From Rebecca billardiae RCC1528 (Eukaryota; Protista; Haptophyta): a stretch of DNA of 64,000 nucleotides. The position numbers were made by a program, and so were the translations under genes. The notes below the pieces were generated by a model. The model was not told the origin of the DNA. It was given only the letters and a program-made list of their open reading frames with translations, and did no database searches. Numbering within the stretch: the first letter of the stretch is position 1; each line of letters begins with the position of its first letter. This document shows positions 19,787 to 64,000 of the stretch, piece after piece. The stretch spans positions 434,001-498,000 of the forward strand of contig OZ251226.1 of the NCBI GenBank assembly GCA_965240325.2, read 5' to 3'.

Positions 19787-20353
19787 ATCTTCATCGTCTC
19801 ACTCTCACTCACACTACTGACTCACTGGGTAAAGTAGCATCGCGCAAGCCTAGCGGATCGGCGGTGGCAGCCCCAGGCTGCTGACGCTGTGAGCCACGCC
19901 GTCCGCTCTGCTGGCGCGCTCACATTCAGTCGATAATCACGCGAACAATATGATGCCGTTCGGACCGACTTCCCGTGCGCGCGGTCGGCGACGGCCCCGG
20001 ACCGCCCCGGTGGCCGAGGCCCCCGCCTGAGGCCCCGAGCCCGCCGAGTAACGCGGATCAGGATATTATGAGACAGGATATGACTGTTATTGACTGCTAC
20101 GTATCGTAGCGTACTCATCATAAATATGATGACGAGCAGTCGGTGATGTAGTCGTCATCATCCGACTGGCATCAGCGGTGATCAGCTGCGGCAGTCGGAT
20201 GCTGCCAGCAGATGATCGCCGGAGCCCAGATCGCGCGAGTCAGCCTCACTGAGTGAGCCTGTCAGGCTGGAATCAGCATCAACTATCAAGTACGGCTAAC
20301 TGTAGTACTGTAGTAGTTACATGACTACATGAGCCCCCCCGCTGTGATTGTCA

Positions 20354-22037: not shown

Positions 22038-25000
22038 ATGACGAGGGAAAGCGGCGGCGGGAGCGCCGTGGCGCTGCTCGCGCTGTTGGGCGGCGCGGTG
22101 GGCGCCGGGGCACGGCCGCCGTGCGTCACGCTCACCTCGGGCGCGCGACATACGTGCGCCTCGGCGTGCGCCAGCGGCGATCTCATCGCCTGCTGGGGCG
22201 CCAACGAGCGCGCGCAGTCGTCTGTGCCCTCGCTGGGCAAGCGCCTGCTGCACGCGAGCGCGGGCGAGGCGCACACGTGCGCCACGACGGCGGACGGGGA
22301 AGGGTACTGCTGGGGCGACAACTCGCGCGGCCAGCTCGGCCTCGGCCTGCTCGCGCCGCACGTCGGCGACGCGGCGCGCGCACCGGTGATGCTCGGCCGC
22401 ACGCGCGGCGCGGCGCCTCCGCCGCCCGCCCACGCCGCGTCGCACTGCGACCGGCATGCGTCGGGCTGGTGGCTCACGGAGGCATGCAAGCGGGAGCACG
22501 CCCTCATGCAGCCGAGGCCGCCCACCGGCCCGCCGATGCGCATCGTCGCCATCTTTGCGGGCTCGCAGCACACGTGTGCGCTCGGCGTCGACGGCGCGGT
22601 CAAATGTTTCGGCAGCGGCTCGAAGGGGCAGCTGGGGTACGGCGACCGCACGTCGCGCGGCATGAGCGCGGACACGATGGGCGACGCCCTCCCCGAGGTC
22701 GAGCTCGGCGCGGGGCGCACCGCCAAGGCGCTCGCCCTCGGGCGCGAGCACACGTGCGCGGCGGTGCGCGACAGCGGCGCCGGTGACGGCTTGGCTGCCG
22801 ACGCGCCGCCGAATCAGGTGCTGTGCTGGGGCGCGGCGATGAACGGCCGACTGGGGCTGGGCGACTCGCGCCACCGCGGCGATGTGCCCGGCACGATGGG
22901 CGACGCGCTCGCGCCCGTCGACCTCGGCTCGCGCGGCGGGCGCGGGCGCATCGACCAGCTGGTCGCAGGCGCAAGACACATGTGTGCGCTTGTCTCCTCG
23001 GCGCATCCGCCCGTGTCTGCGCGGCGCGGCGCGGGGCGCGAGGGGGCGGGCGCGGACGCGCGCGACTCGCACAGTCGGAGCCGACGGCGCTCGCGCTCAC
23101 GCCGTCGAGGCGGTGCCGACGACGACGACGACGAGGCCGCCGCCTCCGCCTCCGCTGCCGCCGTCGGCGCCTCCTCCGCTCCTCCGCCCAGTGACGGGGG
23201 CTCAGTGCTGTGCTGGGGCTGGGGCAAGCACGGCCAGCTGGGCTACGGTGCGCGCCGCCGCCGCGGGAGTGCCGCGCGCGCGCCTCCCTCGCGCGCGCGC
23301 GCGCTCTCGCGCCGCGCCCTGGCGCGCACGCCTTTTCACACGCACGCGCCCTTGCCCTGCGCGCGCGCGCGTTTGCTGTGCACGCCTGCGCTGCCGCCAC
23401 TGCCCCGCTGCTGCCCTGCTGCTGCCGCCGCGCTCCACCCCGTCGCAGGCGACGACGAGGACCGCGGCGAGACGTCCGCCTCGATGGGCGACGCCCTGCC
23501 CGCAGTCGACCTGGGCGAGGGCGCGCTCGCCCTCGCGATCGCAGTCGGCGACGAGCACACGTGCGCTATCGTGCAGCGGGCGGCGGCGCCGGGCGCGGCG
23601 GCGGCGCCGCCGCCGAGCGCAGTGTGCTGGGGCGCGCAGGGCTCGCGCCAGCTGGGCGTCGAGGTGCCGCGGGGCTCGCTGCGCCAGGACGTCGGCGACC
23701 AGCCGCACCAGATGGGCGAGCTGATCGAGCCCGTGCCGCTGCGCCTCGCCGCGACGCCGGCGATCAGCGCGGGCGGCAAATTCAGCTGCGCCGCGCTCGA
23801 GGCCGGGCGCGCGGATGCGTCTACGGCGGCGGCGGCGCACGTTGCGTGCTGGGGCGCGTCGACGGGCGGCGCGCTCGGCGACAAGTCGCGGCTCTCGCGC
23901 TCGCACTCGCACCTGCCGCTCACGCGCGAGCACGTGGACACGCGCAGCGCGAGCATCGGGCCGCTGCTCCAGATCGACATGAGCGCACTCGAGGCGCTGC
24001 CGACGCTCTCCGCTCACGCGGGCGGCTCGGCCGGCGGCGCGCGGAGCGGTGGGGACGGCGCGCGCCGAGCGGTGGGGACGCCGGCGCCGGCGCCGGCGCT
24101 GACGCCGGCGCCGGCGCCGGCGCCGGCGCCGTCACCGAGCTCGCGTGGCCCAGGTGGAGGGAGGAGGCGAGGTCGGCCGCGCCGCTCCCGCGCCTCGCCG
24201 CCGCCTGCCGCGTCGTCGCCGCCGCCGCCACCGCCGCTGCTGATGCCGCCGCCCTCGCCGGCGCCGCCGCTGCAGCCGTCCCTGCTGGCGCTTCTGCTAG
24301 GCCAGCAGCTGCCGCCGCCGCCGCCGAGCTCGCCACCGCCCGCCGCCGCGTGGCCGAGCGTGCCGCTGGTGGGGGCGGGTCGAAAGGGCACGACACAGCG
24401 CTACTGGCCAAGCCCTCCGCCGCCGCCGCCCTCGCCGCGCCGAGGCCGCGCGCGCCGCGGCTCGGGCGGGGCCGAGCGCCCCTCGCCCTCGCCCTCGCCC
24501 GCGCCCTCGCCCGTGCCGCAGCCCGCGCGGCGCGGCTCGTGGCGAGACGCGGTGAACCTCGAGTGCTACGAGGACAACCAGGCGCACGACTACCGCGGCC
24601 ACGTCTCGGTCACGGCGCGCGGCCTGCCGTGCCAGCGCTGGACGGCTGTGCTGCCTCACAAGCCGCACTTCACGCCCGAGCGGGTGCGCGCGCTCGGGGC
24701 CCGCGGGCGCGGTGGGGCCGTCCCGCGCGCGCGCCGCCACACCGCCCGCCCTCGGCTCACCCGCCCCGCCACCGCGCCGCCGCGCGTGCGCCCGCGCCCT
24801 TTCCGCGCCGCGCGCCGGCTCCGGGCCCTCAGTACCCGGACCGTGGGCTGGGCGACCACAACTACTGCCGCGCCCCCGGCCGGTACTCCTACTGCGCCTG
24901 GTGCGTGGGAGCACGCAGCATCGCCGGCCGCGCGGAACCCGAGCGGCCGCGCGCGCCGCGCGCACCGCCGCCACGCGAGCCCCCGCTCACTTGACCCCCC

Positions 25001-26115
25001 GCCCTGGCTGGCTCCGCGCGGCGGACCGGCCCGGCCCGCCACCGCCGCGCGGCTGTGTGCGCGCCCCCTCCGCCCCCTCGCGCCTCGTGTGTGCGCGTGC
25101 GGCCGTGTGTGTGTGCGCGCGCGTGCGCAGGTGCTACACGACAAACCCCGGCGTCGAGTGGGACTGCTGCGACGTGGGCATGCCCGCGGACAGGTGCATC
25201 TGGTTCCCCTCGCCGCCGCCGCCGCCGTCGCTCCCGCCCTACTCGCCGCCGCCCTCGCCGCGCCCGTCGCCGCCGCCGCCGATCCCGATGCCGCCCGCGC
25301 CGCCCGTGCACCTGAAGGACCCGGAGTGCTACACGCACTACCAGGCGCGCGACTACCGCGGCCGCGTGAACAGCACCTCGCGCGGCTTCACGTGCCAGCA
25401 GTGGACGGCGCAGGCGCCGCACGCGCACAGCTACGACCCGGCGGCATACGCCGCGTACGGCATCGGCAACCACAACTACTGCCGCGCCGCGGGCTCGTTC
25501 TGCGCGTGGTGCTACACGCAGCACGAGGGCAAGCCGGAGTGGGACTGCTGTGACATCGGCCCGCCGTCCGACTTCTGCGAGATCATCTCGCTGCACGAGG
25601 ACCGAGGCCCGCACGGCGCGCTGCCGCCGCGCACGGTGCCGAGGCCCATCGCGCCCGCGTGGGCGACGAGCGCCCCGTGGCTCGGCAGCGCGCTGCTGCT
25701 CGGCGTCACGGTCGGGCTCGCGATCGCGCTCGCCGCGCTGCGGCGCGCGCGGCGCGGCGCGGCGACGCCGCTGCCGACCAGCGTGCCCGAGCTGCTGGAG
25801 CCCACGCCGAACCGGCGCGCGCGGCACAACGGTGGCACTACGCGGCAAGCGCGCGGCGCGAGCGTGGCGGGCCGTGAGCTGCCGGCGCGCTCGAGCGGCG
25901 GCGCGGGGGGCGCGGCCAAGCCCGAGCCGCACCGTGCGAGCGGCGCGGGGCTCGCGCGGCCGCCGGCCGCGGCGCCGCGCCCAGCAGCTGCGGCAGCATC
26001 ACCGGCCCCTCTGAGACCGCCAGCGAGCGCGCCGCCGACACCCGCCCCGGCCGGGGCGACCGCTCGTCGCAGCCGCTATGAGGACGCGAGCTACCTCGCA
26101 TCGCCCATGCTGTGA
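22038..26115 (+). CDS. Type I membrane protein: signal peptide, RCC1/BLIP-II repeats, Pro-rich stalk, two kringle domains, TM; exons 22038-23247, 23449-24683, 24833-24900, 25131-26115
   Basis: RCC1-like AGxxHTCA...CWG.N..GQLG repeats. Kringles ECY...DYRGHVSVTARGLPCQRW...HNYCRAP...WCYT and ECY..DYRGRVNSTSRGFTCQQW..HNYCR..WCYT. Three GT..AG introns join the frames. TM LGSALLLGVTVGLAIALAAL. Confidence 0.85.
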
Positions 26116-41456: not shown

Positions 41457-44400
41457 GGCCCGGCGGCGGCGGAGCCTGCGTGGATCCGGCGGGCCCCGCC
41501 GAGCTCGGGCGCGGCGGCGGCTGCGCTGCCGCGCGCGCGCCACTCTCAGCCGCCACCGCGGTGCGCGCCCACGCCCAGAGCGCGCGCGCCGTCTCGCTCT
41601 CGGCCGCGCGGCACTCGGCGTGGGGGCGTGGTGCGGCGGATGGGTCGGGCGCGCGCGCCGGCGGCGGCGAGCGCACGACGCCGTCTCTCAGAGCGGCGGC
41701 GAGCACGCGGCACGCGCCAGCCACCGCGCCGAGCAGCCGAAGCATCTGCGCTCGCTCTGAGCTCAGCAGCGGCGGGTCGCCCGGCTGCCAGGCCAGAGGC
41801 GGGCGCAAGCGCGCGGCCGCGAGCTCGGCGGTGCACTCGGCGGCGGCGACCTCGGCGGCGGGCGGCTCGGCGGCGGGATCGGCGGGGTCGGCGGCGCAGC
41901 ACGCGGCCGGGGCGAGGCGAGGCGGCGGTGCCGAGGCCGCCGGCGCTCTCGGCGGCGCGCCGGGCGCCGCCGGCCGCGCGGCCGGCGGCGTCGCGCCGAG
42001 CGCGCGCGCGGCGTCGTCGTAGCCGGGCAGCAGGCTCGGGCGCAGCGGCAGCGCCGGCCCCGCGGGCAGCGCGCGCGACGGCGGCGCGCGCGCCTGCTGC
42101 CGCGCACCGCCGAGCGGCGCGCACAGCCGCAGCAGCGCCAGCAGCTGGCACGCACGCAGGGCACGGACGTCACAAGTGCCCGCGCCCGCGGCCGCGCGCG
42201 CGAGCGCGGCCGCGGCGTACATCGCGGGTCCGGGCCCGGCGGCTGCGGAGGGCAGGGCGATGGCGGCGAGATGTGCGATCTCGGGGAGTGCGAGCTCGAG
42301 GCGAGGCGAGGGCTCGCACCCGGCGGCGAGCGCGCCCGCTGCGCCGGCCGGCAAGCCAGCCTCGCCGCCCGCGGCCAGCAGCTCAAGCCGAGGCGCACGC
42401 GCGCACGCGCGCCGCTCGGCGCCCGCGCCATCATCGTCGCCCGCGCCGCCCGCGGTGGAGGCGGCGCCGGCGGTGGAGGCGGCGCCGGCGGTGGAGGCGG
42501 CGCCGGCGGTGGAGGCGGCGAAGGCGGTGCACGCGCGCAGCGGCGCGGGCTCGGCGGGCGGCACGCACGCGAGCAGGGCAAACGCGCCCAGAGCGCCGCT
42601 CAGGAGCGCGTCGCGCGCCGCGGCGGGCACGCAGCGCTCGGCGGCGAGCGCAGGCCGCCAGCTCGCCCACCCCTCCGCCGAGCTCGGCGCGGCGCCGAGC
42701 AGCGCGCGCAGCGTGGGCGAGAGCGAGCGCTGCGCGGCGCGCGCGCACGCCACGGCCACGTCCGCGTGCGCGAGCGCGTGCCCGCCCACGGCGCGCGCGG
42801 CGCTCGCGGCCGCGCGCGCGCGCGCCACGGCCTCCGCCACCGCGGCCGCGCGCTCCTCCGTCGCCTCGCTCAGCCGCTGCCGCAGAGCCTCGGTGCAGCC
42901 GGCCATGTGCTTCGTCACTTTGGACGAGGACGCGGCGGCGCCCGACCCGGCGCGCGTGGAGTGCCACAGCGCGCCGTTCGAGTAGTACAGGTTCCACGAG
43001 GTGCTGACGGCGGCGTCGGCGCCGCTGCCACCACCCTCTGCGCCGCTGCTGCCGCCGCCGCCGCTGCCGCCGCCGTCGCCGCCGCCGCCGCCGCCGCTGC
43101 CGCCGCCGTCGCGCCGCTCAATCCGCAGCTCGATGTCCGTGCGCTTGCCGGCGTGCCACTTGCCCACGCTGAGCGCGCGCGCGTGGCGCAGCGCGTCCGC
43201 GACGTCGCGCACCGCCGCCGCGCCGCCGCCGCCCGCCGCGGGCAGCTCGTCCCACCAGAGTCCGGTGCAGTCCTGCTCCTTGCCCCGTGCAAACGCGCCG
43301 CCGTACGCCGAGCGGTCCGGAAACAGCCGGAGCGCGTCGCCGTGCGCCCGGCCGTCGACGAACTCGCCGGCGGTGAGGGCGCCGTCGAGCGCGCTGCGCA
43401 TCACGCCGGACCCGTGCGGCCGCGACGCGCGCAGCTCGCCCTCGTACTCGAACGCATGCGTGCGGAGCACGCCGAGGCCCTCGGCAGCATGGCCGCCGCC
43501 GCATGGCACAGCGGGCGCGGCCGCGCCGCCGCCCCTGCCCGCCGCGGCCGGCGAGGGCCCGGGCACCATCTCGCCGGCGTACCAGCACGGGCGCGAGCGC
43601 TCGCGCCAGGAGAGCACGCCCGGCCCCGTCAGCCCGGGCGGCTCCACCTCCGCGCGCCCGCCGAGGCCGCACGCGCCCGCGTGCGCGCGCTGCACGAACG
43701 TGCCCTCGGCGGCGAGCCCGCTGCCATTGCTCGCGGCGTACACGCACACGCCGCGCGCGTGCGAGCCGTCCGCGTGCCACTCGGCGCTGAGGGCGTAGCC
43801 GTTGCGCAGCACGCCCAGGCCGGCCGGCACGAGCGCCGCCGCCGGCGCGACGCCGCCCTCGACACCGCCCGCCGCGCCGCCGCCGCCGCCCCGCCGCAGC
43901 CGCCCCGCATACACTGCTTCGCCGCCGGCCGCGCTCGCGCGCAGGATGCCGCGCAGCGCGCCGGCGCCGCCGTCGTCGACGGCGACGACGGCGAAGTCGC
44001 CACCGGGCGAGAGCTCGCCGAACACGCCGTCAGCCGCGCCCTCCGCCCCCGCCCCGTGCGCCGCGCGCGCGTGCGGCACATCGCCCGGGTCGCCCTTGAC
44101 TCTGAAGTGCGCGCCGCCCACGTGCGCGCGCGAGAGGCGCACGGCGCCGGGCACGCACTTGAAGAGCTCGATGGCGCCGGACTGCGGCTGGAAGACGTGG
44201 ACGCACGGGATGCCGTGCTTCAAATCTTCCCCGCGCAGCGCCGCGACGACCACGCCCTCGCGCCAGTAGCCCGTGTCGTCCGGGCGCGTCTCAACAATGT
44301 CGTCACGCTTCAAGTCTTCGAGGGTGGCCGCGGCGTCGGCGGGCGGCGGCGGGCGGAGGCAGCGCGCGTGCACGTCCTCCTCGAGGAGCACCGTCTGCGC

Positions 44401-50382: not shown

Positions 50383-51278
50383 GTCAACTGTAGCGTACTA
50401 TCATAGATCGATTGCGCCAACTACGACGTGCCATCACTACCTATCCGCAATCGCGTGCCGACACCCGCACCGTTAAAGACTATGGCCGCGCAGCGCCCGG
50501 CTGCCAGTGGCCGTGTCTCATGACGGCCGACGAAGGTCCGAGTGGTCGTAACGCCGACCGTGAAATCGACGCAGAAAAGGATTTTCGCGCATTTACTGCG
50601 GAACAAAAGCGGGGCCGCGGCCGCCCGTCGGCTGGCGTCCCGCTGGCGATACGTCAGACAGGTCAGACAGGACGTAAGGTACCGGCCCGCACGCCGCGGC
50701 CTCGCACGGCGCGGAGAGCCAGAGGCAGATCCATGGGGCGACAGCCGCTCGCCCGCTCGGGCGCGGTCCAACTTGACGTTCTCGAGGTACGGTCGACAAC
50801 GCCGAACGACCCTGCACGCCTCACCTCAGACACCTCGCCGCACACAAGCGCGTTCACTAAACGGCCTCCATCGAGGCTCTCTGCCGTGGCCAGTCAATTT
50901 ACTGAAATATGAATTGAGTGAATACTGCCGTTATATATGTCCATCAGAGGACCGGGCTCGCCTCGTTGCCGTGCCGAATAGAACTAAAACAGGCCGCCTG
51001 CTGCTGCACCCTGCGGGTAAAATATTTTCATGCAGCTTATATTCACATCGTTCTAATTATTATTCAATAAGGTGTGCTATGATCATACAATCATTATAAT
51101 AATCATATTGCCTATATATTATTATTTATTAATATAACACGTTGACGAGCTAGTTCCGCATACTTCGTGCGCGCTGATGATGTTACATTATCGGTCAGTC
51201 GGTGAATATATATGGTGTACAGCTGCTCTACGTATACAACAGCCAATAAGCCGTAGTGCAGCGCGATATTGACGACAA

Positions 51279-52435
51279 TTACCTCTGCTCGGTGATGCTG
51301 ACGCTCGCCGTCGCAGCCGCGAGAGCGTCCTCCTCGCCCGCTGCCGCCTGCTTAGGACCGCGCCGGGGTAGGGTGCGGCGCCGGGCACGAGCGGCCAGGT
51401 GAGCACAACGCCAGCGACGGCCGTTGCGAGTGCGCGCGCGCGCGCGTCTCCGTGTCGCGCGCACGGGGCGCGAGCGCGCACCTTGGTGTGGGCGTTCGCG
51501 CTGTCCGCGCCCTGCGGCTGCTCATCGGGCTGAGCCGCGCGCCGAGGGAGCGCGTCGACGCACTTGTCGATCGAGACGGTCTCGGAGATGGCGTCCATCT
51601 TGGGCACGTAAGTGGTGAAGTGCGGGGTGGCGAAGTGCGCCTCGAGGTGCGCCATCGACGCCCACTCCTCCGTGATCACGAAGCGTGTCGGCGAGTCGGC
51701 CGACTTGACAAAGTTGTACTTGAGCACGCCGGGCTCGCGCCACGTGTGGTGCGCGAGCTTCTCCGCCATGGCAAGCCACTCGGCCTGGTTGGCCTCGGGC
51801 ACCTCCTTCGTCACGATCACATGCACCGCGCAGTGCGCCATCGGCGCGCTCGCCGCGTCCTCCGCCTTGGCCTTCTCCGCGGTCGCGGCGTCGTCCGCCT
51901 TGGTCGTGAGCAGCGGGTGCAGCGTGCGCCGGCCGTCGACGAAGACGGCGACCCACTCGGCGAGGCGCAGACCGAGGCGCTGGCACGCGAGCTTGTCGTG
52001 CTCGTTCCGCGGCTGCTTCGCCACCACCGCGCCGTAGTGCAGCGTGTGGATCTTGTCGACGTAGTCGGTCACGCCGAAGCTGAGGAAGCCGAAGTTCATC
52101 AGCACGGTCGACATGGCGAGGCAGGACATCTCGGCGCCGCCGCCGTGGCCGCCCTGCGAGGAGAAGACGGTGCAGAGCTTGCCGTCACATTTGTTCCAGT
52201 TGTCCGCGGCGAACTCGTCCCACCACTTCTTCATGCGCCACGCGATGCCGCCGAGGTTGGTCGGCGTGCCGACCGCGAGGCCGTCCGCCCACAGCACGTC
52301 CGCGTGCGTGCAGTCCTCGGTGGAGCGGAGGCGAATCTCGTGGCCGGGGATCTGCGCGGCGCCGGCGGCGACGAGCTTGCCCATCTGCGACGTGCAGTCC
52401 GTGTTCGAGTGGAAGAAGACGAGGATGCGGCCCAT
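51279..52435 (-). CDS. WrbA-type flavodoxin-like NAD(P)H:quinone oxidoreductase fused to an ABM (YgiN/LsrG-like) domain, ~340 aa; exons 52435-51482, 51347-51279
   Basis: WrbA: ILVFFHSNTDCTSQM (FMN loop), ADGLAVGTPTNLG, DGK..VFSSQGGHGGGAE, YGAV. ABM: TWREPGVLKY...PTRFVITEEWASMAHLEAHFATPHF. GT..AG intron 51481-51348. Confidence 0.88.
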
Positions 52436-52915
52436 GGTGCGTCGTGCGAGAGGCAAGGGAGTAATCGGCCGGAGGTTCTTGCGGCTGTCCGTTGCCGGTA
52501 GAGCGTTGCCCAGTAGCAAGCGTCGCCGGGGAACCTTGGCCTGGATTCCCCCTGCACAAGGCACTTGGGAGGCGGAGGACGCCGGCAGGTATCACTAGTA
52601 GGGAGGAAGTAGTAAGCAGTATTATAGCGGCGAGTTGCACCGGTGACCGGAAAGATCGCGGGCTTATCAGCTGCTGAGCGGGACTTGGAGGCTGCTGCTA
52701 CCCAGCGGGCTAAGCGAGTCGTAAAGATCGCGCGTCCTCAATATGGCTTGGCGAGATCCGTCCTGATTGATGGTGGATTCTCGTAACCAAAGGTCCATTC
52801 AGATTCTCGGCGGCCGCCGGAGATGCAGAAGGCGACCACCAAAGTTCTCTCTTCTATTCCTTTGGTTCCACGCAACCGCTACCGACTCCGATCAACCCGT
52901 CCTCAACCCGTGTAC

Positions 52916-55767
52916 ATGATGTCGTCCTCGTCCACCATGACTCGCCCGCTCCCGCTCGTCGGCTTCGACACGATCGACTGCAGCACCGACGCGGAGAACA
53001 CCAAGAAGACCATCCTCGAGGCCATTCGCTCCGGCATGCGCCTCTTCGACTGCGCCTCGCTCCACGGCAACGAGAAGGAGGTCGGCGCGGCGCTGCGCGC
53101 CGCGATCGACGCCGGCGAGGTGTCGCGCGAGGAGCTCTACATCGTGTCCAAGCTGTGGTGCGCGGACGCGGCGCCGGAGGATGTCGAGGCCGCATGCCGC
53201 AGCACGCTCGAGGACCTCGGCCTCGACTACCTCGACGAGTACTCCATGCACTGGTGCGTGTCGCGCGGCGCGCCGGTACTCGACACCGCCTAACCGCGCG
53301 CGCGCCAGCCAGGCGCATCAGCTGCCAGCCGCTTCGCGCGCGGGCCCACACGGCCGCCCGACCGCTCTCGCGCGTACTCATGCTCTCGCGCCCACCCGCT
53401 CGACCCCGCGCGCCGTGCAGGCCCGTGCGCATGACGCCCGAGTCGGACGCGGTCGACTTTGAGCTCGTGCACAGCGGCACGCGCGCGGGCATCGCCGAGA
53501 CGTACGCGGCGATGGAGAAGCTCGTGGAGGCTGGCCTCGTGCGCACGCTCGGCGTGTCCAACATGAACGCGCGCATGCTCACCGAGCTCGTCGCGGACTG
53601 CGCCATCAAGCCGCGCGTGCTGCACGTCGAGATGCACCCGTTCCTGAGCCAGCGCGAGCTGCTCGAGCACTGCCAGACGCTCGGCATCCAGCCCGCCGCG
53701 CACTTCCCGCTGGGCATGGTGCGCGGCCGCCGTGGTGCCGCGCCCACGTGCGCCGCGCCCGACGCACGCCCGCACAGCGCGCGCCGCCGCTTGGCCCGAC
53801 CGCTCACCTCGCTCCCCGCGCGCGCGCACGCGCACACGCCACGCCGCCTCGTCGTCCGCGCGCAGGTGGGCGCCGCGGCGGTGCGCGCGCACGCTGACCT
53901 TCGCCTCTACCCGGCCGTCCAGGCGCTCGCGCTCGAGGTGGGCAAGTCGGCGACCGAGGTGCTTCTTCGCTGGGGCGTGCAGCGCGGCACGACGGTGATG
54001 CACACCTCCGTCGAGACCTCCGTCCTCGGCGTGCTCGACTGGCAGCTCACGGAGGAGCAGCTGGGCCGCCTCGACGAGCTCGAGCAGGGCCTCCGGTTCG
54101 CGCGCGTGCCGTGGTTCGACTTCGACGCGAAGCCGCCGCTCAACGTGAACGTGGCGCCGCCGGGGCAGCCGCTCGTGAAGGAGGGCGAGGAGGACGAGCG
54201 CGGCTTCTACCGCAACACCTTCGGCCGCAGCGGCAAGACGATGCACACCGAGGTCGTCATCCGGCGCGGCCTGCTCAAGCGCGACGAGCTCGCGGCCAAC
54301 GCGAAGCACTTCCTGCCCGAGAAGTGCCACGGCGCGCCGATCCACGTGGTGACGGACACGGTGGTGGACAAGATCTATGGCGAGCAGGTGGTCGCCGGCC
54401 TGCGCGCCGCCGGGCTCGAGGTGCACAAGACCGTGATGCCCTCCGATCTCGCCGACGCCGCGGGCGAGCCCTCGACCGAGCACCACAAGACGATGGCTGT
54501 GCTCGCCAACTGCGCGGACGAGATCCTGCTCAACGGCATCAACAAGAACTCGGCGATCGTCTCGCTCGGCGGCGGCGTAGTGAACAACCTGGCGGGCGTG
54601 CTCGCGGGCATGCTGTACCGCGGCATCTCGCTCGTGCACCTGCCCACCACCACCATGTCCACCTTCGACGCGGCGCTCGACTTCAAGCAGGCGGTCAACC
54701 ACCCGCTCGGCAAGAACCTGCTCGGCTGCTACTACCCGGCGACCACGATCGCGATCGACCCGGACGCGCTCTCCACGCTCACGGAGCGGCACATCCTCAA
54801 CGGCATCTCGGAGGCGCTCAAGCACGGGCTCACGCAGTCGCGCGAGCTCACCGACATGATCGTCGACCCGCTGCGCGCGGGCAAGCCGCTCACGGACGGA
54901 GAGTACCTCGAGCGCATCTGCAAGGCGGCGCTCGAGATCAAGGCGCCCACGCTCGACGCGTACGAGAAGACGGACTACAACGAGGTGTGCCCGCAGTACG
55001 GGCACGCGATCGGGCACGCGGTCGAGCACCTCTCGTGGAGCGGCCCGCTGCACCGCCCGCTGCTCCACGGCGAGGCCGTCGCCATCGGCATGTGCGTCTC
55101 CGCCGAGATCGCGCTGCGCAAGGGCATCTGCACGCAGGCGGTCGTGGACGAGCACTACGAGCTGATCGGCGCGACCGGCCTGCCCACGTTCGTGCCGCGC
55201 TCGATGGACGCGGACAAGCTGGTGCGCCAGATGCGCTTCGACAAGCACACGCTCAAGAACCCGGCGATGGGCCTCTGCGCCGCGATCGGCGGCATGGCCA
55301 CTGACGCGGAGAACGGCACCTACTTCTTCGACACGAGCGTCGACGAGCTGCACGCCGCGCTCGAGGCGAACGCCGCGCGCCGCGACGTGTCCGAGGGCTG
55401 CGTGCAGTGCGCGCCCGAGCCGGTGCGCGCCGCCGAGCCCAAGGCCACCGAGCCGAAGCCGCCCACCGCCGGCTCCACGAACGACCCTGACGCGGAGCGC
55501 AGCACGCCGCCGCCGGAGGTGCCGGAGGTGGACCCGACGCCGGTGGTCGAGCTGCCGCCGCTGCAGCCGTTCGTGCGCGCGGTCGACCACGAGAAGCTGG
55601 ACCAGTACCGCCGCGAGTACATGCAGTACCGCATGGGCTCGGCGTGGGGCTCGCGCGGCGAGCTCGAGCGCCTGGCGAGGTCGCGTGGCAAGCAGGCGCG
55701 CGCCGGCAACTCGATGACGTCGACGCAGCAGCAGCAGCAGCAGCAGCCCATGGTCGGCGCCGCATAA
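52916..55767 (+). CDS. Aldo-keto reductase fused to a sugar-phosphate cyclase (2-deoxy-scyllo-inosose synthase-like, DHQS superfamily); exons 52916-53253, 53421-53718, 53866-55767
   Basis: AKR: GMRLFDCA, REELYIVSKLW, LDYLDEYSMHWP (across intron 1), MEKLVEAGLVRTLGVSN, EMHPFL, LRWGVQRG. Cyclase: LGGGVVNNLAG, YRGISLVHLPTT, KQAVNHPLGKNLLGCYYP, EALKH, YGHAIGHAVE, HGEAVAIGM. The frame is continuous from the AKR C-terminus into the cyclase. Start may be 52937. Confidence 0.88.
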
Positions 55768-56238: not shown

Positions 56239-57563
56239 TCAGTCCTTCACGCCCATGCGCTTGCGCCGCACATCACGCGCGTTTGCTGCCTGCCGCTCGT
56301 CCATGCGCGCCATGAACGCCTGCTTTTCGATGTACCCGTCCTTGGCGAACTTGTCCATCGCCTCGACCTCCTCCTCCGCCTGCGCGCTCTTGAACTTGCG
56401 CCAATCGAGCTGCGACTTCTCCATCGTCGACATCTTCTTCGGCTTGTCGATCTTGGCGAGGAGGGCCGCCATGCCGCCGCCGCCGCCGGCAGCGGCGGGC
56501 AGCGCGGGCGCGGGCCGCGCGGGCGGCGCGCCGGGCGGCGCGGCGGGAGTGCCGCCGCCGCCGCTCCCACCGCCGGCGCGCAGCGCGGCGAGCGCCGCCT
56601 TGGCTCGCGCCTCGCTGCTCCCGACCGGCGCGGCAACGCCCCTGGCGCCTGGCAGGCTGCCGCCGCTGCCGCCGCGAGCAACGGCGCCGCTCGCACCGGC
56701 GGCGCCGCCAGCGACTCGGAGGGCGAGCTCCTCCTTGCTGCCGATCTTCACCTCGCGCTCAACCTCGATCTTCTCCCCCGCAAAATCCTTCGTCTCCTTG
56801 ACAATGATGACGCCCGGCTTGGCCGCAGCCTTGCCGCCGCCGCCGCCGCCGCCGCCGAGCGCGCCGAGGCTGGCGATGCCGCCGACCGTCGACGCGGCGG
56901 GCTTCTTCGGCGCGCTAGAGGACGGCCCCTGCATCGATGCCCAGATGTCGTCGATCGACGAGCTCGGCTTCGAGCCCGCGCCCGTGCTGCTCGCACCCTC
57001 GGCCCCACCGCCCCCCCCAGCTTTGGCGCCCGCGCCCCTCGCGGCCGGTGTCGGCTTGGCGTTCAGCTCAGCCCACAGCGAGTCGACCTTGCTCTTCTCG
57101 GCTTCGGAGGGCTCTTCGAGCGCCTGGGCGGCCGGCTCTGCCTGTTCCTCCTGCTCGAGCAGGTGCTCCTCGCCCTCAAGCACGATGCCACCTTGCCTGC
57201 AGGGCGAGGGTGGCGCACGCGTGCAGCCGCGCGTGACGGGGTCACACACCGCGCAGCGCGCGCGCGCTGAGCGCGGCGCGCAAGCGGCGAGTCGCGCGAG
57301 TGCGCACCGGCCACCGGCGCCACGCCGACCCTTGGGCTTGGCCTTTGAGCCGCGCGCCTTCTTCTTGGCCGGGCCGTCGCCGTCGCTGTCGTCACCTGCT
57401 CAACGAGCGGTGCGCGGACGTGCGGGCGCGCCGTGAGCATCGTCACTGCGCGCGGCAGGTGCACTCGCGCGGCGCCAACGGAGGGCCACCGTGGCAGGGG
57501 CGTACCGTCAGGGACATAGTCCTCGTCCTCCTCGCTGTCGTAGTCCTCCAGCGGGTCAGGCAT
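56239..57563 (-). CDS. CFDP1: BCNT-domain protein (CFDP1/Swc5, SWR1 complex); exons 57563-57506, 57395-57308, 57196-56239
   Basis: Acidic N-terminus YDSEEDEDYVP, then VDSLWAEL, DFAGEKIEV and the BCNT C-terminus KMSTMEKSQLDWRKFK...DGYIEKQAF. Two frame-consistent introns. Confidence 0.88.
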
Positions 57564-60963: not shown

Positions 60964-63900
60964 ATGGTGGCCGCCGCGGCCGGGCAGGCAGATGGCGCTT
61001 TGCCCGAGCCAATGTACCAGGCGGCCGACCCAAGCCGCGCGGCGTACGTGCCGGAGGGCATGCTCTCGCTTCTCCTCCGGGTGCGCCCGCCGCGCAGACG
61101 CGTGCGACCGCGCGTCCTCCCCTCATCGTCGCTCGCGCGCCGGGGCGTGCCCGTGCTCGTCGCGCCCTTCGCGCTCGCCGCACGCACGCGCAGTACGCTC
61201 CCGAGGAGCTCTCGAACGTCGCGCTAGCCAACGGCGCTCGGGCGTCTTCTCTCGAGCGGCGCGACGCACGCAGCTCGCCCACGCCTCGGCGCAGGTCGCC
61301 TGCTCGCCGCGCGGCGCAGCACGCGGCGGCCAGCGCGCCGACGCTCGAGTTGCATTTCTCTGAGCGCGTTCGTGTGGCGGCGGGGCGCGAGGCGGACGCG
61401 CGCGCGCGAGGCACGGCGGCGCATGCGTGCGCGCCCGGCGCCACCGCCGCCACCGCCGCTGCGCCGCCGGCCGATCCGTCCTCGCGGGCGCCTCGGCGCC
61501 TGCGCTCTGCGTCCGACGCCGACGTCTCGGCGGCGGGCGGCCGCAGCGGCGCTTCCGGCGGCGCGCAAGCCGCGCCGGGCGGGCTGACGTGGCTGTCGCA
61601 TCCGGACGGGGGCGTGGCAGCGAGCGCGCCGCCGCCGCGCCCGGCCGTGCGCTCGACCCGGCCCCCGGCCGCGGGCGCGCAGCCGCGCGTCGCGCGGCCG
61701 ACGGTGCCGGCCAGGGCGGGCGCAGCTGCTGCGCCGGGCGGCGCACGCGGCGCGCGCCCGCTGCCGGCGGGCAGAGCCGGCGACGGCGCGCCCCGGCTCG
61801 CACCGACGGCGCGCTCGCGCTCGGCCTCGCCGAGTCCCGGCGCTGCCGCCACGCAGCGCGCACGACCTGCCCCGGGCGCGGGCGCGGCCCCGACGGCCGC
61901 GCCGCGCTGGGCGGCGCCGCGCGTACCGCGGGTGGCGCGCGCCGCGCCCGAAGCGGCACCGGCTGGCGCGGGCGATGCCGCCGGGGATCCACCGCGCGCG
62001 CGCTCGGCTCCGCACGCGCATCGGCGGCCAGTGCGCGCGCGCGCACGCGCCGCCTCCGTCGGCGCGCGCCCGGCGCTGGAGCTCGCTCCGGGCGCGGACG
62101 GCGACGGCGCGGGCGCCGGCAGCGGCGGCGGCGGCGCGGAGGCAACCGGCGGCGGGCCTGCCAGCGGCGCGGCGTCCGCGCGGCTCCGTCGCGCGCCGCT
62201 CGCCGGCGTGCCGCGCGAGCGCGCCCGCGCCTCCGTGTCCGCGCGCCCGCGCCCGCCGACCGCCGCCGCCGCCGCCGCCAGCCGAGCGCCGCCGCCGCCG
62301 CGCGCGCCAGACACGTCCGCACGAGCGAGCTCTCTCGAGCGCGCGCGGCCGGCGCGCGCGCTCACGCGCGAGGAGCGGGCGGAGGCGCGGGCGTACATGG
62401 CGAAGCAGCGCGCGCGCCTGCGGCGCGGCGAGCCGCCCACCGCCGCCGCCGAGGGCACGGCCGCAGACCTCAAGTTCGCCACGCAGTCCGACGCCCTCGT
62501 CGAGGCGCTCCCGCCGCCGCGCGCTCGCACGCCGCCGGCGCCGGGCATGCGGCGGCGCGGCGCGCCGAGTGCGCGGCCGAGCGGGGCCGACGCCGAGGGC
62601 GTGGACGGTGCGGCCGCCGAGCTGGCGGCGCCCACGGGGCTGCTGAGCGCCGCGCTCGCCGCCGACATTGTCGCCTCCGCCGCCGCGAGCTCTGCGGAGA
62701 CCCCCGCGGCCACGGCAGCGGCCGACGGCGGCGTCAGCGCGGCCGCCACTGCTGCGTCGGCGCCGGCCGCACCGGAGCTGCGTCCGGGTGACGTCCTCCC
62801 AGCCGCGGGCGATGGCGCGGGCTCGGCCGCGCCGCGGGCGCCGATCGACGCCGCCGAGCCCGTCGCGCCCAGCTCGGCCGCCGCCGATGCCGCCCCCGAG
62901 CCGGCGCGCGCGCGAAGCGCCGACCCGGCCGCGTCCGCGCCGCGCGCGCGCTCGCGCGGCCGCCGCGCTGCTCGCGCTGCGGATGTGCTGCCGCAGCGGG
63001 ACGAGGGCCTGCCCCCGCGGCGCGCGCGGCCGCCCGAGGAGTCGGCGAGGATCGCGGCCTTCATGCGCAAGCAGCGCCTCGACGCGCGCCGCGGCGCCGC
63101 GCGCAAGGCCGAGGCCGAGCGCGAGCTCGCCGCCGAGCGCGCCGCGCAGCTCGCCAGCCTGCGCCACTTCTCGGAAACTTCGCGGCGCGAGTTCGTCGCG
63201 GCGCGCGAGGAGCGCGAGCGCGCCGCGCTCGCGGAGGCGCACGCGCCCGGCGCGGAGGCGCCCGGCGCGGCGGGCACGGGCGGCGGCGCCGCGCGGCCGA
63301 CCGCGCCGGCGGCGCCGCCCAACCCTGGGCGCGTGCGCACCGCGCAGCGCGCGCCTTGGTCGCAGGAGTGGGAGGGGGCGCCGCCGCTGCCGCCGCCGCC
63401 CGCCGCCGGCCGCGGCGGCGCGGCGGGTGGGCGGCGTGCGGCGGACGGCGCAGAGCGCCGGCAGCCGTCGAGGCACGCGCAGGCCGAGCAGGCGGCGGCG
63501 GCGTACGCGGCGGCGCTGGCGCAGAAGGACGCGGCCGCGGACGCGCGCGTGGCCAGCCGCTACGAGCGCGTGCGCGCGCTGGCGAGCGCGCAGCGCGAGG
63601 CCGCGCGGCGGCACGCGCGGCGGCGGCAGCAGCGCAGCCTCGGCGGCAGCCGACGCGGCTCGGCGCACGACGCGGCGGCCGGCGGCGCCGCGCGGCCCCA
63701 GGGCAAGCGCGCCGCTCTGGAGCCCGCGGCCGCAGGGCTGGGCGCCGACGACTCGGCCGCGAGCGCGCCGCCCGTGCGCGCGGGTGCGGCCGCGCATGCC
63801 GACGGGGACGAGGGCGCGGCGGCGGCGCTGGGCGCCCCGGCGGACACGGGCGAGGAGGGCGCAGAGGCGGCGGAGGCGCAGCGGCCGGGCGCGCGCGCGG

Positions 63901-64000
63901 TGCGCGCCGCCTCCGCCGACGCCCGCCCCCCGAGCTTCGCGGCCGCGGCCGCGGCCGGCGTCGTCATTGGCGGCACGGGCGGCGGCGGCGGCGCTGACGA
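60964..64000 (+). CDS. Partial low-complexity / coiled-coil hypothetical protein running off the window; intron 61081-61193
   Basis: Exon 1 MVAAAAGQ...LLLR, then a gtgcgc..cgcag intron, then an open frame with helical blocks (REERAEARAYMAKQRARL, ARIAAFMRKQRLDARR). No stop seen in the parts I read. Confidence 0.55.

What the first reader, a model, noticed from the sequence alone, without database searches (positions are those of the whole stretch)
51279..55767. Candidate eukaryotic deoxy-cyclitol (quercitol / cyclohexanetetrol) biosynthetic mini-cluster: DOIS-like cyclase+AKR divergent from WrbA+ABM
Seen: two fusion genes lie head to head about 480 bp apart and carry four enzyme domains: sugar-phosphate cyclase, aldo-keto reductase, FMN oxidoreductase and ABM. 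Established: 2-deoxy-scyllo-inosose synthase (BtrC family) cyclises glucose-6-P and is known from bacterial aminoglycoside clusters. Pavlova/Diacronema (Monochrysis) lutheri accumulates 1,4/2,5-cyclohexanetetrol as a salinity-responsive solute; I know of no assigned genes for it. Inference: if this genome is from that group, cyclisation, dehydration/isomerisation (ABM), C=C reduction (flavoprotein) and keto reduction (AKR) are the steps needed for a mono- or dideoxy-inositol, so this pair could be the missing osmolyte pathway.
Basis: partly seen in the sequence, partly recalled or inferred. Interest (0 to 1): 0.88.

Follow-up and report, generated by a model that had tools for sequence, protein, structure and literature searches.

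The report
Conserved algal cyclitol gene pair, trimmed copy
Two back-to-back fusion genes in this Diacronema-like alga belong to a gene cluster shared by many marine protists, built around a new type of sugar-phosphate ring-forming enzyme; it is the best candidate for the unknown route to their deoxy-cyclitol salt protectants, though this copy has a crippled reductase half and lacks one domain.

Summary
Gene A (+, 3 exons, 52916-55767) is an aldo-keto reductase (AKR) fused to a DHQS-like sugar-phosphate cyclase. Gene B (-, from 52435) is a flavodoxin-like domain fused to an ABM domain. They lie head to head, 480 bp apart.

The pairing is not chance. The same cyclase sits beside the same flavodoxin/ABM(/ThuA) protein in Diacronema lutheri, three diatom loci, a pelagophyte and one unnamed contig, with shuffled domain orders. 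A ketoreductase is always present: AKR fused to the cyclase, SDR adjacent, or SDR fused to gene B.

The cyclase is neither DHQS nor canonical DOIS. It belongs to a separate clade (about 110 protist sequences plus bacterial nucleotidyltransferase fusions). The catalytic core is intact, and three positions, R264E, N268Q and K356H, are invariant in the clade and match no reference class.

This copy is trimmed. Its AKR differs at 9 of 17 catalytic or cofactor positions (including Tyr to His), and gene B lacks ThuA. The D. lutheri orthologues keep both.

The scan had already noted, on other pieces of this genome, a DOIS-like gene and a flavodoxin/ABM/ThuA triple fusion.

The product (cyclohexanetetrol or quercitol) remains untested.

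The parts
52916..53253 (+). Gene A exon 1: N-terminal part of the AKR domain. It carries Asp, Lys and His of the catalytic tetrad, but His (CAC) where the catalytic Tyr should be.
   Evidence: Pfam Aldo_ket_red. PDB alignments to aldehyde and aldose reductases show 'CASLHGNE' against 'CASVYGNE'. Splice model.
53254..53420 (+). Gene A intron 1 (167 nt, GTGCGT..GTGCAG).
   Evidence: It is the only GT..AG option that restores the AKR motif 'MHWP' and keeps the frame. Homology to the D. lutheri gene stops at 53254.
53421..53718 (+). Gene A exon 2: middle of the AKR domain.
53719..53865 (+). Gene A intron 2 (147 nt, GTGCGC..CGCGCAG).
   Evidence: Best-fitting in-frame option after 'FPLGM'. It agrees with the orthologue alignment.
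53866..55767 (+). Gene A exon 3: AKR C-terminus (degenerate 'MHTS' in place of 'IPKS'), linker, cyclase domain, non-conserved tail and stop codon.
54205..55383 (+). Sugar-phosphate cyclase domain (DHQS-like fold, new clade). Metal and catalytic residues are intact. E, Q and H stand at AnDHQS positions 264, 268 and 356.
   Evidence: Pfam DHQ_synthase + DHQS_C. PDB hits to DOIS and DHQS. Fingerprint table. Trees.
52436..52915 (.). 480-bp divergent intergenic region between the two start codons. It is the presumed shared promoter region; this is an inference.
   Evidence: Coordinates. No expression data could be obtained.
51896..52435 (-). Gene B flavodoxin-like domain (aa 1-180). It is 2ARK-like rather than canonical WrbA.
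   Evidence: PDB 2ARK at E 6e-66. 76% identical to the D. lutheri-type orthologue. Bacterial relatives at 50-61% identity.
51548..51841 (-). Gene B ABM (ferredoxin-like alpha+beta barrel) domain (about aa 199-296).
   Evidence: Pfam ABM at 1e-16. Only 1 of 21 family-conserved columns is changed.
51188..51547 (-). Arg/Ala-rich ORF tail with no homology, running to the first stop codon. Orthologues have a ThuA domain at this point, and it is missing here. The true 3' end of gene B is unknown.
   Evidence: Homology to L002 ends at 'SIDKCVD'. tblastn finds no ThuA anywhere in the window.

Best explanation
The window holds one copy, a trimmed paralogue, of a conserved protist metabolic module that makes a carbocyclic polyol from a sugar phosphate.

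Shown:
1. Gene A encodes a DHQS-fold sugar-phosphate cyclase of a previously undescribed clade. All NAD/metal/catalytic residues are present. The DAHP-carboxylate arginine is replaced by Glu.
2. Across lineages this cyclase is always accompanied by a ketoreductase: a fused AKR, an adjacent SDR, an SDR fused to gene B, or (in bacteria) a fused or adjacent SDR.
3. In six further loci from at least three eukaryotic lineages it lies next to a flavodoxin-like/ABM(/ThuA) fusion protein.

Inferred mechanism:
1. The cyclase takes a hexose 6-phosphate, most simply glucose 6-phosphate. It oxidises C4 with bound NAD+, eliminates phosphate, re-reduces, and closes the ring by aldol reaction to give a deoxy-inosose.
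2. The ketoreductase turns this into a deoxy-inositol (a quercitol-type pentol).
3. The flavodoxin/ABM/ThuA protein does further redox or enolisation chemistry. One plausible route is beta-elimination of a second hydroxyl via the enediol, then reduction of the resulting 1,2-dione. That gives the 1,2,4,5-tetrol known from Diacronema and from diatoms.

In this particular locus the AKR half has lost its catalytic Tyr and its NADPH site, and gene B has lost ThuA. This copy probably contributes only the cyclase and flavodoxin-ABM activities. The complete set would be supplied by the second locus that the scan noted elsewhere in the genome.

My odds: about 0.75 that this is a functionally coupled cyclitol module; about 0.3 that the end product is cyclohexanetetrol or a quercitol osmolyte.
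For: Domains.

Conserved adjacency of the cyclase and the gene-B family:
- D. lutheri L023.
- D. lutheri-like metagenome contigs L002-L004.
- Nitzschia inconspicua L006.
- Cylindrotheca closterium L008: two cyclases, two SDRs, an MFS transporter and an extra ThuA gene.
- Pelagophyceae CCMP2097 L009.
- L011.
- L025/L026, with SWEET and MFS transporters.

Domain shuffling and co-distribution:
- Both domain orders occur: Fld-ABM 20 times, ABM-Fld 39 times.
- The two families share the same taxa: diatoms, pelagophytes, haptophytes, chlorarachniophytes and choanoflagellates.

Bacterial relatives:
- They sit in glycopolymer clusters with the core CDP-alcohol phosphotransferase, cyclase, SDR, APH-type kinase and nucleotidyltransferase.
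- Some are NTP-transferase-cyclase-SDR triple fusions.
- This means the ketone product is reduced to an alcohol that can be phosphorylated.

Cyclase classification:
- Fingerprint: the core is kept; T153Q as in DOIS; R264E, N268Q and K356H are invariant in 109 eukaryotic and 11 bacterial members.
- The clade has 100% support. Grouped with a DOIS-like Streptomyces protein it gets 100/97.8.

Producers: cyclohexanetetrol is reported from Chaetoceros and Nitzschia (PMC5334607) and putatively from Isochrysis (PMC7998644). D. lutheri, the classic producer to my knowledge, carries the intact cluster.

This copy: AKR degeneration; ThuA absence.
Against: - No enzyme of this clade has been assayed, so substrate and product are inferred.
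- Global similarity does not favour DOIS over DHQS: the family profile scores 205 bits to a plant DHQS and 190 bits to BtrC.
- The AU test does not reject a placement with AroB (p = 0.20).
- The module also occurs in choanoflagellates, euglenids, red algae and an amoebozoan, for which I know of no cyclohexanetetrol report.
- It was not seen under the names of model diatoms.
- No function is known for ThuA. The roles assigned to ABM and the flavodoxin are chemical plausibility only.
- Prymnesium has cyclases without the neighbour. The Monosiga genes lie on different scaffolds.
- No RNA data could be found for the window.
Confidence: 0.6

Rival explanations
1. The module makes a redox-active aromatic or quinone-type metabolite rather than a saturated cyclitol osmolyte. 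The deoxy-inosose would be dehydrated to a trihydroxybenzene or hydroxyquinone. The flavodoxin-like domain would act as an NAD(P)H:quinone reductase and ABM as a quinol monooxygenase, as in the E. coli MdaB/YgiN cycle.
For: - The flavodoxin domain has weak WrbA and quinone-reductase similarity.
- The ABM domain hits the YgiN quinol monooxygenase among PDB entries.
- The two domains are always fused.
- Sugar transporters in the diatom clusters could equally serve export of a signal compound.
Against: - A ketoreductase is a constant partner, and the bacterial relatives clearly use the reduced alcohol.
- No aromatic product of this kind is known to me from these algae.
- ABM similarity to YgiN is weak (E 1e-4).
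Confidence: 0.13
2. The window locus is a decaying duplicate with no remaining role. The real pathway is encoded only by the complete locus elsewhere in the genome.
For: - The AKR differs at 9 of 17 catalytic or cofactor positions, while close relatives keep 16 of 17.
- ThuA is deleted and gene B runs into non-homologous Arg/Ala-rich sequence.
- There is no flank synteny with D. lutheri.
- Earlier scan notes describe a triple fusion and another DOIS-like gene on other pieces.
Against: - Both reading frames are open, and the modelled introns have GT..AG ends and keep the frame.
- The cyclase changes only 1 of 105 family-conserved columns and keeps every active-site residue.
- The flavodoxin domain changes 3 of 58 conserved columns and ABM 1 of 21.
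- ThuA-less Fld-ABM proteins and degenerate-AKR fusions recur in other taxa, which suggests a viable variant architecture.
Confidence: 0.15
3. The module is catabolic or a salvage route. It would take up an external sugar or cyclitol through the linked transporters and oxidise it (ThuA stands for 'trehalose utilisation'), with the cyclase only incidentally linked.
For: MFS Sugar_tr and SWEET genes flank the diatom clusters. In rhizobia, ThuA is associated with formation of 3-keto sugars (my knowledge of the Pfam family description).
Against: DHQS-fold cyclases are biosynthetic ring-formers. The cyclase is the most conserved member of the cluster. The transporters are absent from the Pavlovales loci.
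Confidence: 0.07
4. The cyclase is the organism's 3-dehydroquinate synthase of the shikimate pathway, and its neighbours are unrelated.
For: The best NCBIfam model is aroB. The family profile scores DHQS structures slightly above DOIS.
Against: - The aroB score of 199 is below the cut-off of 305.
- The carboxylate-binding Arg264 is Glu, and Asn268 and Lys356 are also changed, invariantly.
- The protein is fused or linked to reductases and never to shikimate genes.
- It is present in heterotrophic choanoflagellates and euglenids.
- It forms a clade separate from four AroB references.
Confidence: 0.02

Closest known systems
2-deoxy-scyllo-inosose synthase (BtrC/DOIS) of aminoglycoside clusters
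   Same: - DHQS fold.
- 'KQAVN' motif (Gln after the catalytic Lys), Tyr at position 269, Lys250 and His275 retained.
- No carboxylate-binding Arg.
- Best single-sequence PDB hit (2D2X).
- Sister position in the trees.
   Different: - Position 264 is Glu (Gly in DOIS).
- The DOIS-specific Glu243 position is Gln.
- Position 356 is His (Gly in DOIS).
- Sisterhood is not secure (AU p = 0.20; the profile scores DHQS higher).
- The family is eukaryotic, contains introns, is fused to an AKR, and has no aminotransferase partner.
3-dehydroquinate synthase (AroB/DHQS)
   Same: Same fold, metal ligands and catalytic Lys/Asp/Asn. The phosphate-site residues are conservatively replaced (Asn to Gln, Lys to His).
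   Different: Arg264 to Glu. The score is below the aroB cut-off. There is no shikimate context, and the family forms a separate clade.
[quoted passage not shown]
   Same: A recently recognised hexose-phosphate cyclase that had been annotated as DHQS. It also occurs in algae.
   Different: The reference from Gloeothece has a different fingerprint (H250, S264, D268, Q356). EboD is plastid- or bacterium-encoded and has UbiA/TatD partners. It lies far away in the tree.
Vertebrate EEVS + MT-Ox gadusol gene pair (PMC4426668)
   Same: A eukaryotic nuclear two-gene cluster in which a DHQS-fold cyclase and a tailoring redox fusion protein together make a small protective cyclitol-derived solute.
   Different: It uses a sedoheptulose-7-phosphate cyclase class (M250/P275 type), has different tailoring domains, and makes a UV sunscreen rather than a presumed osmolyte.
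Uncharacterised bacterial (Patescibacteria-type) NTP-transferase-cyclase(-SDR) fusions in glycopolymer loci
   Same: Same cyclase clade and the same E264/Q268/H356 fingerprint. The cyclase is coupled to a ketoreductase.
   Different: The product is apparently phosphorylated, nucleotide-activated and transferred to a polymer or lipid. There is no flavodoxin/ABM/ThuA partner.
E. coli MdaB/YgiN quinone reductase + quinol monooxygenase pair; LsrG (ABM-fold diketone isomerase)
   Same: Gene B combines a flavodoxin-fold FMN-type domain with an ABM domain. It has weak sequence matches to WrbA, YgiN and LsrG.
   Different: The matches are far below family cut-offs. The flavodoxin domain is 2ARK-like. 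Orthologues are fused to ThuA. The protein is linked to a sugar-phosphate cyclase.

Membership tests
Sugar-phosphate cyclase superfamily (DHQS fold) | DHQ_synthase N- and C-terminal domains | tested here: met
   PF01761 at 2e-27 and PF24621 at 8e-22, both above their cut-offs.
Sugar-phosphate cyclase superfamily (DHQS fold) | Metal ligands Glu194/His271/His287 and catalytic Arg130, Asp146, Lys152, Asn162, Lys197 (A. nidulans numbering) | tested here: met
   All are present in the window and invariant in the family.
3-dehydroquinate synthase (AroB) | Score above the curated aroB model cut-off | tested here: not met
   TIGR01357 scores 199 bits against a cut-off of 305.
3-dehydroquinate synthase (AroB) | Arg264 (DAHP carboxylate), Asn268 and Lys356 (phosphate) | tested here: not met
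   The residues are E, Q and H, invariant in 120 clade members; four AroB references have R, N and K.
[quoted passage not shown] | Gln after the catalytic Lys ('KQAVN'), with Lys250 and His275 kept | tested here: met
[quoted passage not shown] | Glu243 (BtrC) at the Asn268 position, with small residues at 264 and 356 | tested here: not met
   Gln at position 268, Glu at 264 and His at 356.
[quoted passage not shown] | Phylogenetic grouping with DOIS | tested here: inconclusive
   Sister to one DOIS-like reference with 100/97.8 support, but on long branches. The alternative placement is not rejected (AU p = 0.20).
[quoted passage not shown] | Converts glucose 6-phosphate to 2-deoxy-scyllo-inosose | not testable with these tools
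   Needs an enzyme assay.
Sedoheptulose-7-phosphate cyclases (EEVS/EVS/DDGS) | Met at position 250, Pro at 275, Asp or Ala at 268 | tested here: not met
   The window has K, H and Q. It is also distant in the tree.
EboD / DEIS | EboD-type fingerprint and ebo-operon context | tested here: not met
   The fingerprint differs from the Gloeothece EboD-like reference, and there are no ebo partners in the window.
Aldo-keto reductase (active enzyme) | Aldo_ket_red fold | tested here: met
   PF00248 is found on exons 1-3.
Aldo-keto reductase (active enzyme) | Catalytic tetrad Asp-Tyr-Lys-His | tested here: not met
   The window has Asp-His-Lys-His; 27 of 36 family members keep Tyr.
Aldo-keto reductase (active enzyme) | NADPH-binding residues (Gln183, Tyr209/Ser210, Ile-Pro-Lys-Ser 260-263, Arg268, Asn272) | tested here: not met
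   The window has H, H/F, M-H-T-S, V and a deletion; 9 of 17 positions differ from the consensus.
WrbA (type IV NAD(P)H:quinone oxidoreductase) | Score above the WrbA model cut-offs | tested here: not met
   TIGR01755 scores 37 bits against 132.5; NF002999 scores 47.6 against 141. The closest solved structure is the flavodoxin 2ARK.
ABM domain family | ABM profile match | tested here: met
   PF03992 scores 61 bits against a cut-off of 23.
Eukaryotic metabolic gene cluster | Non-homologous pathway genes adjacent in several independent lineages | tested here: met

The most novel reading that the evidence does not exclude
The E264/Q268/H356 cyclases would be a further, undescribed functional class of sugar-phosphate cyclase. 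Together with a fused or adjacent ketoreductase and the flavodoxin-ABM-ThuA protein, they would form the long-missing pathway from hexose phosphate to the deoxy-cyclitol compatible solutes of marine protists. These solutes include the 1,4/2,5-cyclohexanetetrol of Pavlovales and diatoms, and possibly quercitols. The ABM/flavodoxin/ThuA unit would carry out a new kind of second deoxygenation of a carbocycle.
Probability: 0.3. Interest if true: 0.85.

Novelty: new variant of a known kind. Interest (0 to 1): 0.7.

Why it matters
Cyclohexanetetrol and quercitols are abundant compatible solutes in haptophytes, diatoms and thraustochytrids, and I found no paper assigning biosynthetic genes to them.

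A conserved, portable module of two to five genes gives concrete candidates that can be expressed, assayed and knocked out.

It would also add a new class to the sugar-phosphate cyclase superfamily. That class is shared between marine protists and candidate-phyla bacteria, where it apparently feeds a cyclitol phosphate into a surface polymer.

It would be a rare example of a metabolic gene cluster conserved across eukaryotic supergroups.

Finally, it warns annotators that these proteins, currently named '3-dehydroquinate synthase' or 'aldo-keto oxidoreductase', are neither.

Tried and rejected
- RNA evidence: the look-up of sequencing runs listed no run. Splicing and co-expression are therefore unverified, and read laying was not used.
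- ThuA, MFS, SDR or His_Phos genes inside the window: none found by tblastn.
- Flank synteny with D. lutheri: none. Only the two genes match, at 75-80% nucleotide identity.
- The TPP enzyme next to the D. lutheri cluster was tested as a possible IolD-like dione hydrolase. It is an acetolactate-synthase-type protein, so I dropped it.
- Bacterial homologues of the flavodoxin domain (18 loci) have no cyclase, AKR, ABM or ThuA neighbour. They give no functional lead.
- The ThuA domain has no sequence match in the PDB. Literature searches on ThuA gave nothing useful.
- Wu et al. 2007 and Tanoeyadi et al. 2024 are not held. Residue roles therefore rest on my knowledge of the DHQS and DOIS structures plus the alignments.
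- The idea that the window's AKR is globally fast-evolving was not borne out. The ratio of AKR to cyclase divergence is like that of its relatives, and at a 90% conservation threshold only 4 of 50 columns differ. The loss is specific to catalytic and cofactor positions.
- Literature searches for genes of cyclohexanetetrol or quercitol biosynthesis, or for salinity-regulated 'dehydroquinate synthase' in diatoms, found nothing.

Full report
**1. What is in the sequence**

The region is GC-rich, 60-70% here and about 71% over the window. It carries two divergent genes.

Gene A lies on the + strand. It is best read with two GT..AG introns:
- exon 1, 52916-53253;
- intron 1, 53254-53420;
- exon 2, 53421-53718;
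- intron 2, 53719-53865;
- exon 3, 53866-55767.

Pfam places an Aldo_ket_red domain across exons 1-3, followed by DHQ_synthase and DHQS_C.

Gene B lies on the - strand and starts at ATG 52435. It encodes a flavodoxin-like domain and then an ABM domain.

The two start codons are 480 bp apart.

The next gene downstream (56242-57249, - strand) is an unrelated BCNT-domain protein.

**2. The organism**

The closest relatives of both proteins are 72-76% identical. The 90% cluster of one of them contains Diacronema lutheri KAG8466660.1.

The D. lutheri genome has 73% GC (PMC8379373).

The window is not that locus:
- only the two genes match, at 75-80% nucleotide identity, and the flanks share nothing;
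- in the tree the window branches outside the whole D. lutheri-like group.

Earlier scan notes on other pieces of this genome describe a flavodoxin/ABM/ThuA triple fusion and a further DOIS-like gene. A follow-up agent called the organism 'related to Diacronema'.

I could not read those pieces. I take them as a lead that this window holds a second, paralogous copy.

**3. The pairing is conserved, so the genes belong together**

| Source | Arrangement |
|---|---|
| D. lutheri | Fld-ABM-ThuA (589 aa, -), a His_Phos_1 gene, then AKR-cyclase (+) |
| Nitzschia inconspicua | ABM-Fld-ThuA head to head with AKR-cyclase; an MFS sugar transporter alongside |
| Cylindrotheca closterium | two unfused cyclases head to head with ABM-Fld-ThuA; two SDR genes, a second ThuA gene and an MFS transporter |
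| Pelagophyceae CCMP2097 | an unfused cyclase directly upstream of a 1012-aa SDR-ABM-Fld-ThuA protein |
| Diatom-like contigs L025/L026 | SWEET, AKR-cyclase, ABM-Fld-ThuA, MFS |
| L011 (unnamed) | cyclase, SDR, Fld-ABM-ThuA |

Further points:
- Both domain orders occur in the gene-B family: 20 Fld-ABM and 39 ABM-Fld.
- The two families share the same unusual taxon range: diatoms, pelagophytes, haptophytes, chlorarachniophytes and choanoflagellates. The cyclase is also found in red algae and euglenids, and gene B in Stereomyxa and Rhodomonas.
- A ketoreductase is always present but is supplied by non-homologous proteins. This is the signature of a required pathway step.
- Linkage is not universal. 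Prymnesium has lone cyclases, and the Monosiga genes are on different scaffolds.

**4. What the cyclase is**

Global similarity does not decide between DOIS and DHQS.
- As a single sequence, its best solved relative is BtrC DOIS (2D2X, 144 bits), barely ahead of a plant DHQS (139 bits).
- As a family profile, DHQS entries score 191-205 bits and DOIS 190 bits.
- NCBIfam's aroB model scores 199 bits, below its cut-off of 305.

I built trees using references taken from annotated plasmids and from E. coli: four AroB, a PGAP-named DOIS, three sedoheptulose-7-P cyclases, a DDGS from a mycosporine cluster, an EboD-like protein and an aminoDHQS-like protein.
- The roughly 110 eukaryotic sequences form one clade (100% support).
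- That clade is joined, with 99% support, to bacterial proteins in which the cyclase is mostly fused to a nucleotidyltransferase.
- In a careful 42-row tree this group sits with the DOIS-like reference (100/97.8), but on long branches.
- An AU test does not reject a placement with AroB (p = 0.20).

The active-site read-out is clearer (A. nidulans DHQS numbering).

| Position | This clade | DHQS | DOIS |
|---|---|---|---|
| 130, 146, 152, 162, 194, 197, 250, 271, 275, 287 | all retained | retained | retained |
| 153 | Gln | Thr (Val in one of four AroB references) | Gln |
| 264 | Glu | Arg | Gly |
| 268 | Gln | Asn | Glu |
| 356 | His | Lys | Gly |

- The residues at 264, 268 and 356 are invariant in all 109 eukaryotic and 11 bacterial members of the clade.
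- Arg264 binds the DAHP carboxylate in DHQS (established from the A. nidulans structures; my knowledge). A Glu at that position argues strongly against DAHP as substrate.
- The phosphate-site changes (Asn to Gln, Lys to His) are conservative.
- Glu264 lies one helical turn from the position of the DOIS-specific Glu243 and could take over its role. This last point is inference.
- Lys250 and His275 separate the clade from the sedoheptulose-7-P cyclases, which have Met and Pro there.

I conclude that this is a separate, undescribed class of sugar-phosphate cyclase. It most likely acts on a hexose 6-phosphate.

A 2026 review of the superfamily lists DHQS, DOIS, EEVS, EVS, DDGS and DEIS and mentions no such eukaryotic class (PMC12904256).

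**5. What the bacterial relatives add**

In two independent contigs the bacterial cyclase is flanked by a CDP-alcohol phosphotransferase, an SDR, an APH-type kinase and a second nucleotidyltransferase. These sit inside a glycosyltransferase/flippase locus.

Some relatives, named as Patescibacteria or Parcubacteria, are NTP-transferase-cyclase-SDR triple fusions.

The simplest reading is a sequence of steps: ring formation, ketone reduction, phosphorylation, nucleotide activation, and transfer.

This supports 'cyclase plus ketoreductase gives a cyclitol' as the ancestral core of the system.

**6. This copy is trimmed**

- At 17 canonical AKR catalytic and cofactor positions, most family members match the consensus. 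The Pavlovales relatives differ at only one to three of them (D. lutheri type: one).
- The window differs at nine: Y55H, Q183H, Y209H, S210F, I260M, P261H, K262T, R268V, and N272 lost in a 4-residue deletion.
- Eight other family members show comparable decay. Loss of the reductase function in a cyclase fusion has therefore happened repeatedly.
- Gene B aligns with its D. lutheri-type orthologue up to 'SIDKCVD' (about position 51553). It then runs into non-homologous Arg/Ala-rich sequence where the orthologue has ThuA.
- By contrast, the cyclase changes only 1 of 105 family-conserved columns, the flavodoxin 3 of 58, and ABM 1 of 21.
- ThuA-less Fld-ABM proteins also exist in choanoflagellates and others.

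The copy looks selected for its cyclase and Fld-ABM parts, but not for AKR chemistry.

**7. Mechanism and product**

Shown: the domain set, its linkage, and the intact cyclase catalytic core.

Inferred:
1. Hexose-6-P is converted to a deoxy-inosose by the DHQS-type sequence of NAD+ oxidation, phosphate elimination, reduction and aldol closure.
2. The ketoreductase makes a cyclohexanepentol.
3. For the 1,2,4,5-tetrol, enolisation of the inosose and beta-elimination of the C5 hydroxyl would give a 1,2-dione with the two CH2 groups para to one another. Two reductions then give cyclohexane-1,2,4,5-tetrol.

ABM-fold proteins such as LsrG catalyse related diketone/enediol isomerisations, and flavodoxin-fold enzymes reduce quinone-like diones (my knowledge; only weak matches). 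ThuA has no known chemistry.

Points consistent with an osmolyte role:
- Cyclohexanetetrol is reported from Chaetoceros and Nitzschia (PMC5334607), and putatively from Isochrysis (PMC7998644).
- D. lutheri, the classic producer to my knowledge, carries the intact cluster.
- Proto-quercitol is a main solute of thraustochytrids (title cited in PMC4873566).
- The named diatom carriers (Nitzschia, Cylindrotheca, Amphora, Entomoneis) are genera I know as euryhaline and benthic.

Points that caution against it:
- The module also occurs in taxa with no such report.
- It was not found under model-diatom names.

**8. Verdict**

- linkage, non-DHQS identity and a cyclitol theme hold;
- 'DOIS', 'WrbA' and a working AKR at this locus do not;
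- the product is untested.

This is a new variant within a known superfamily, embedded in a conserved eukaryotic gene cluster. It makes an old question in algal physiology directly testable.

Noticed in passing
window 56242-57249 (-): The gene next to gene A is a BCNT (Bucentaur/CFDP1/Swc5-type) domain protein with long Ala/Gly-rich stretches. It is unrelated to the cluster.
   Followed up: partly
P0050, P0028, P0061, P0073, P0047, P0017, P0014, P0056 (AKR-cyclase fusions from other protists): The AKR half has lost its catalytic Tyr and/or NADPH-binding residues repeatedly in different members of the family, while the cyclase half stays intact. This suggests recurrent conversion of the AKR into a non-catalytic scaffold, perhaps in second copies.
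   Followed up: partly
L001 8941-14330 and L024 7096-13726 (bacterial contigs); P0213, P0216, P0218: Candidate-phyla bacteria (named Patescibacteria/Parcubacteria) carry the same cyclase class fused to a nucleotidyltransferase, and sometimes to an SDR. It sits in a conserved core with a CDP-alcohol phosphotransferase and an APH-type kinase inside glycopolymer loci. This looks like a pathway to a cyclitol-phosphate-decorated surface polymer or lipid.
   Followed up: partly
P0001 (935 aa, JGI metagenome): This protein has two tandem cyclase domains of this class in one chain (residues 181-584 and 595-910).
   Followed up: no
window 51896-52435 (-); L027-L044: The flavodoxin-like domain is 50-61% identical to stand-alone bacterial proteins (Planctomycetota, Anaerolineae, Melioribacter, Aquificota; PDB 2ARK from Aquifex). 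That is unusually high for a eukaryote-bacterium pair and suggests acquisition from bacteria. The bacterial genes have no cyclase, ABM or ThuA neighbours.
   Followed up: partly
L006 4841-6727, L008 1-1127, L011 16276-17379, L025 1731-3305 and 10138-11550: Diatom-type versions of the cluster are flanked by MFS Sugar_tr and SWEET (MtN3) transporter genes. These are possible carriers of the product or precursor. They are absent from the Pavlovales loci.
   Followed up: partly
L023 8905-9765 and L002 3025-3885: In D. lutheri a histidine-phosphatase (His_Phos_1) gene lies between the two cluster genes. It is absent from the window, and its role is unknown.
   Followed up: no
window 14001-20000, 24001-26000, 42001-44000, 62001-64000: These stretches have 80-85% G+C, far above the already high window mean.
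   Followed up: no
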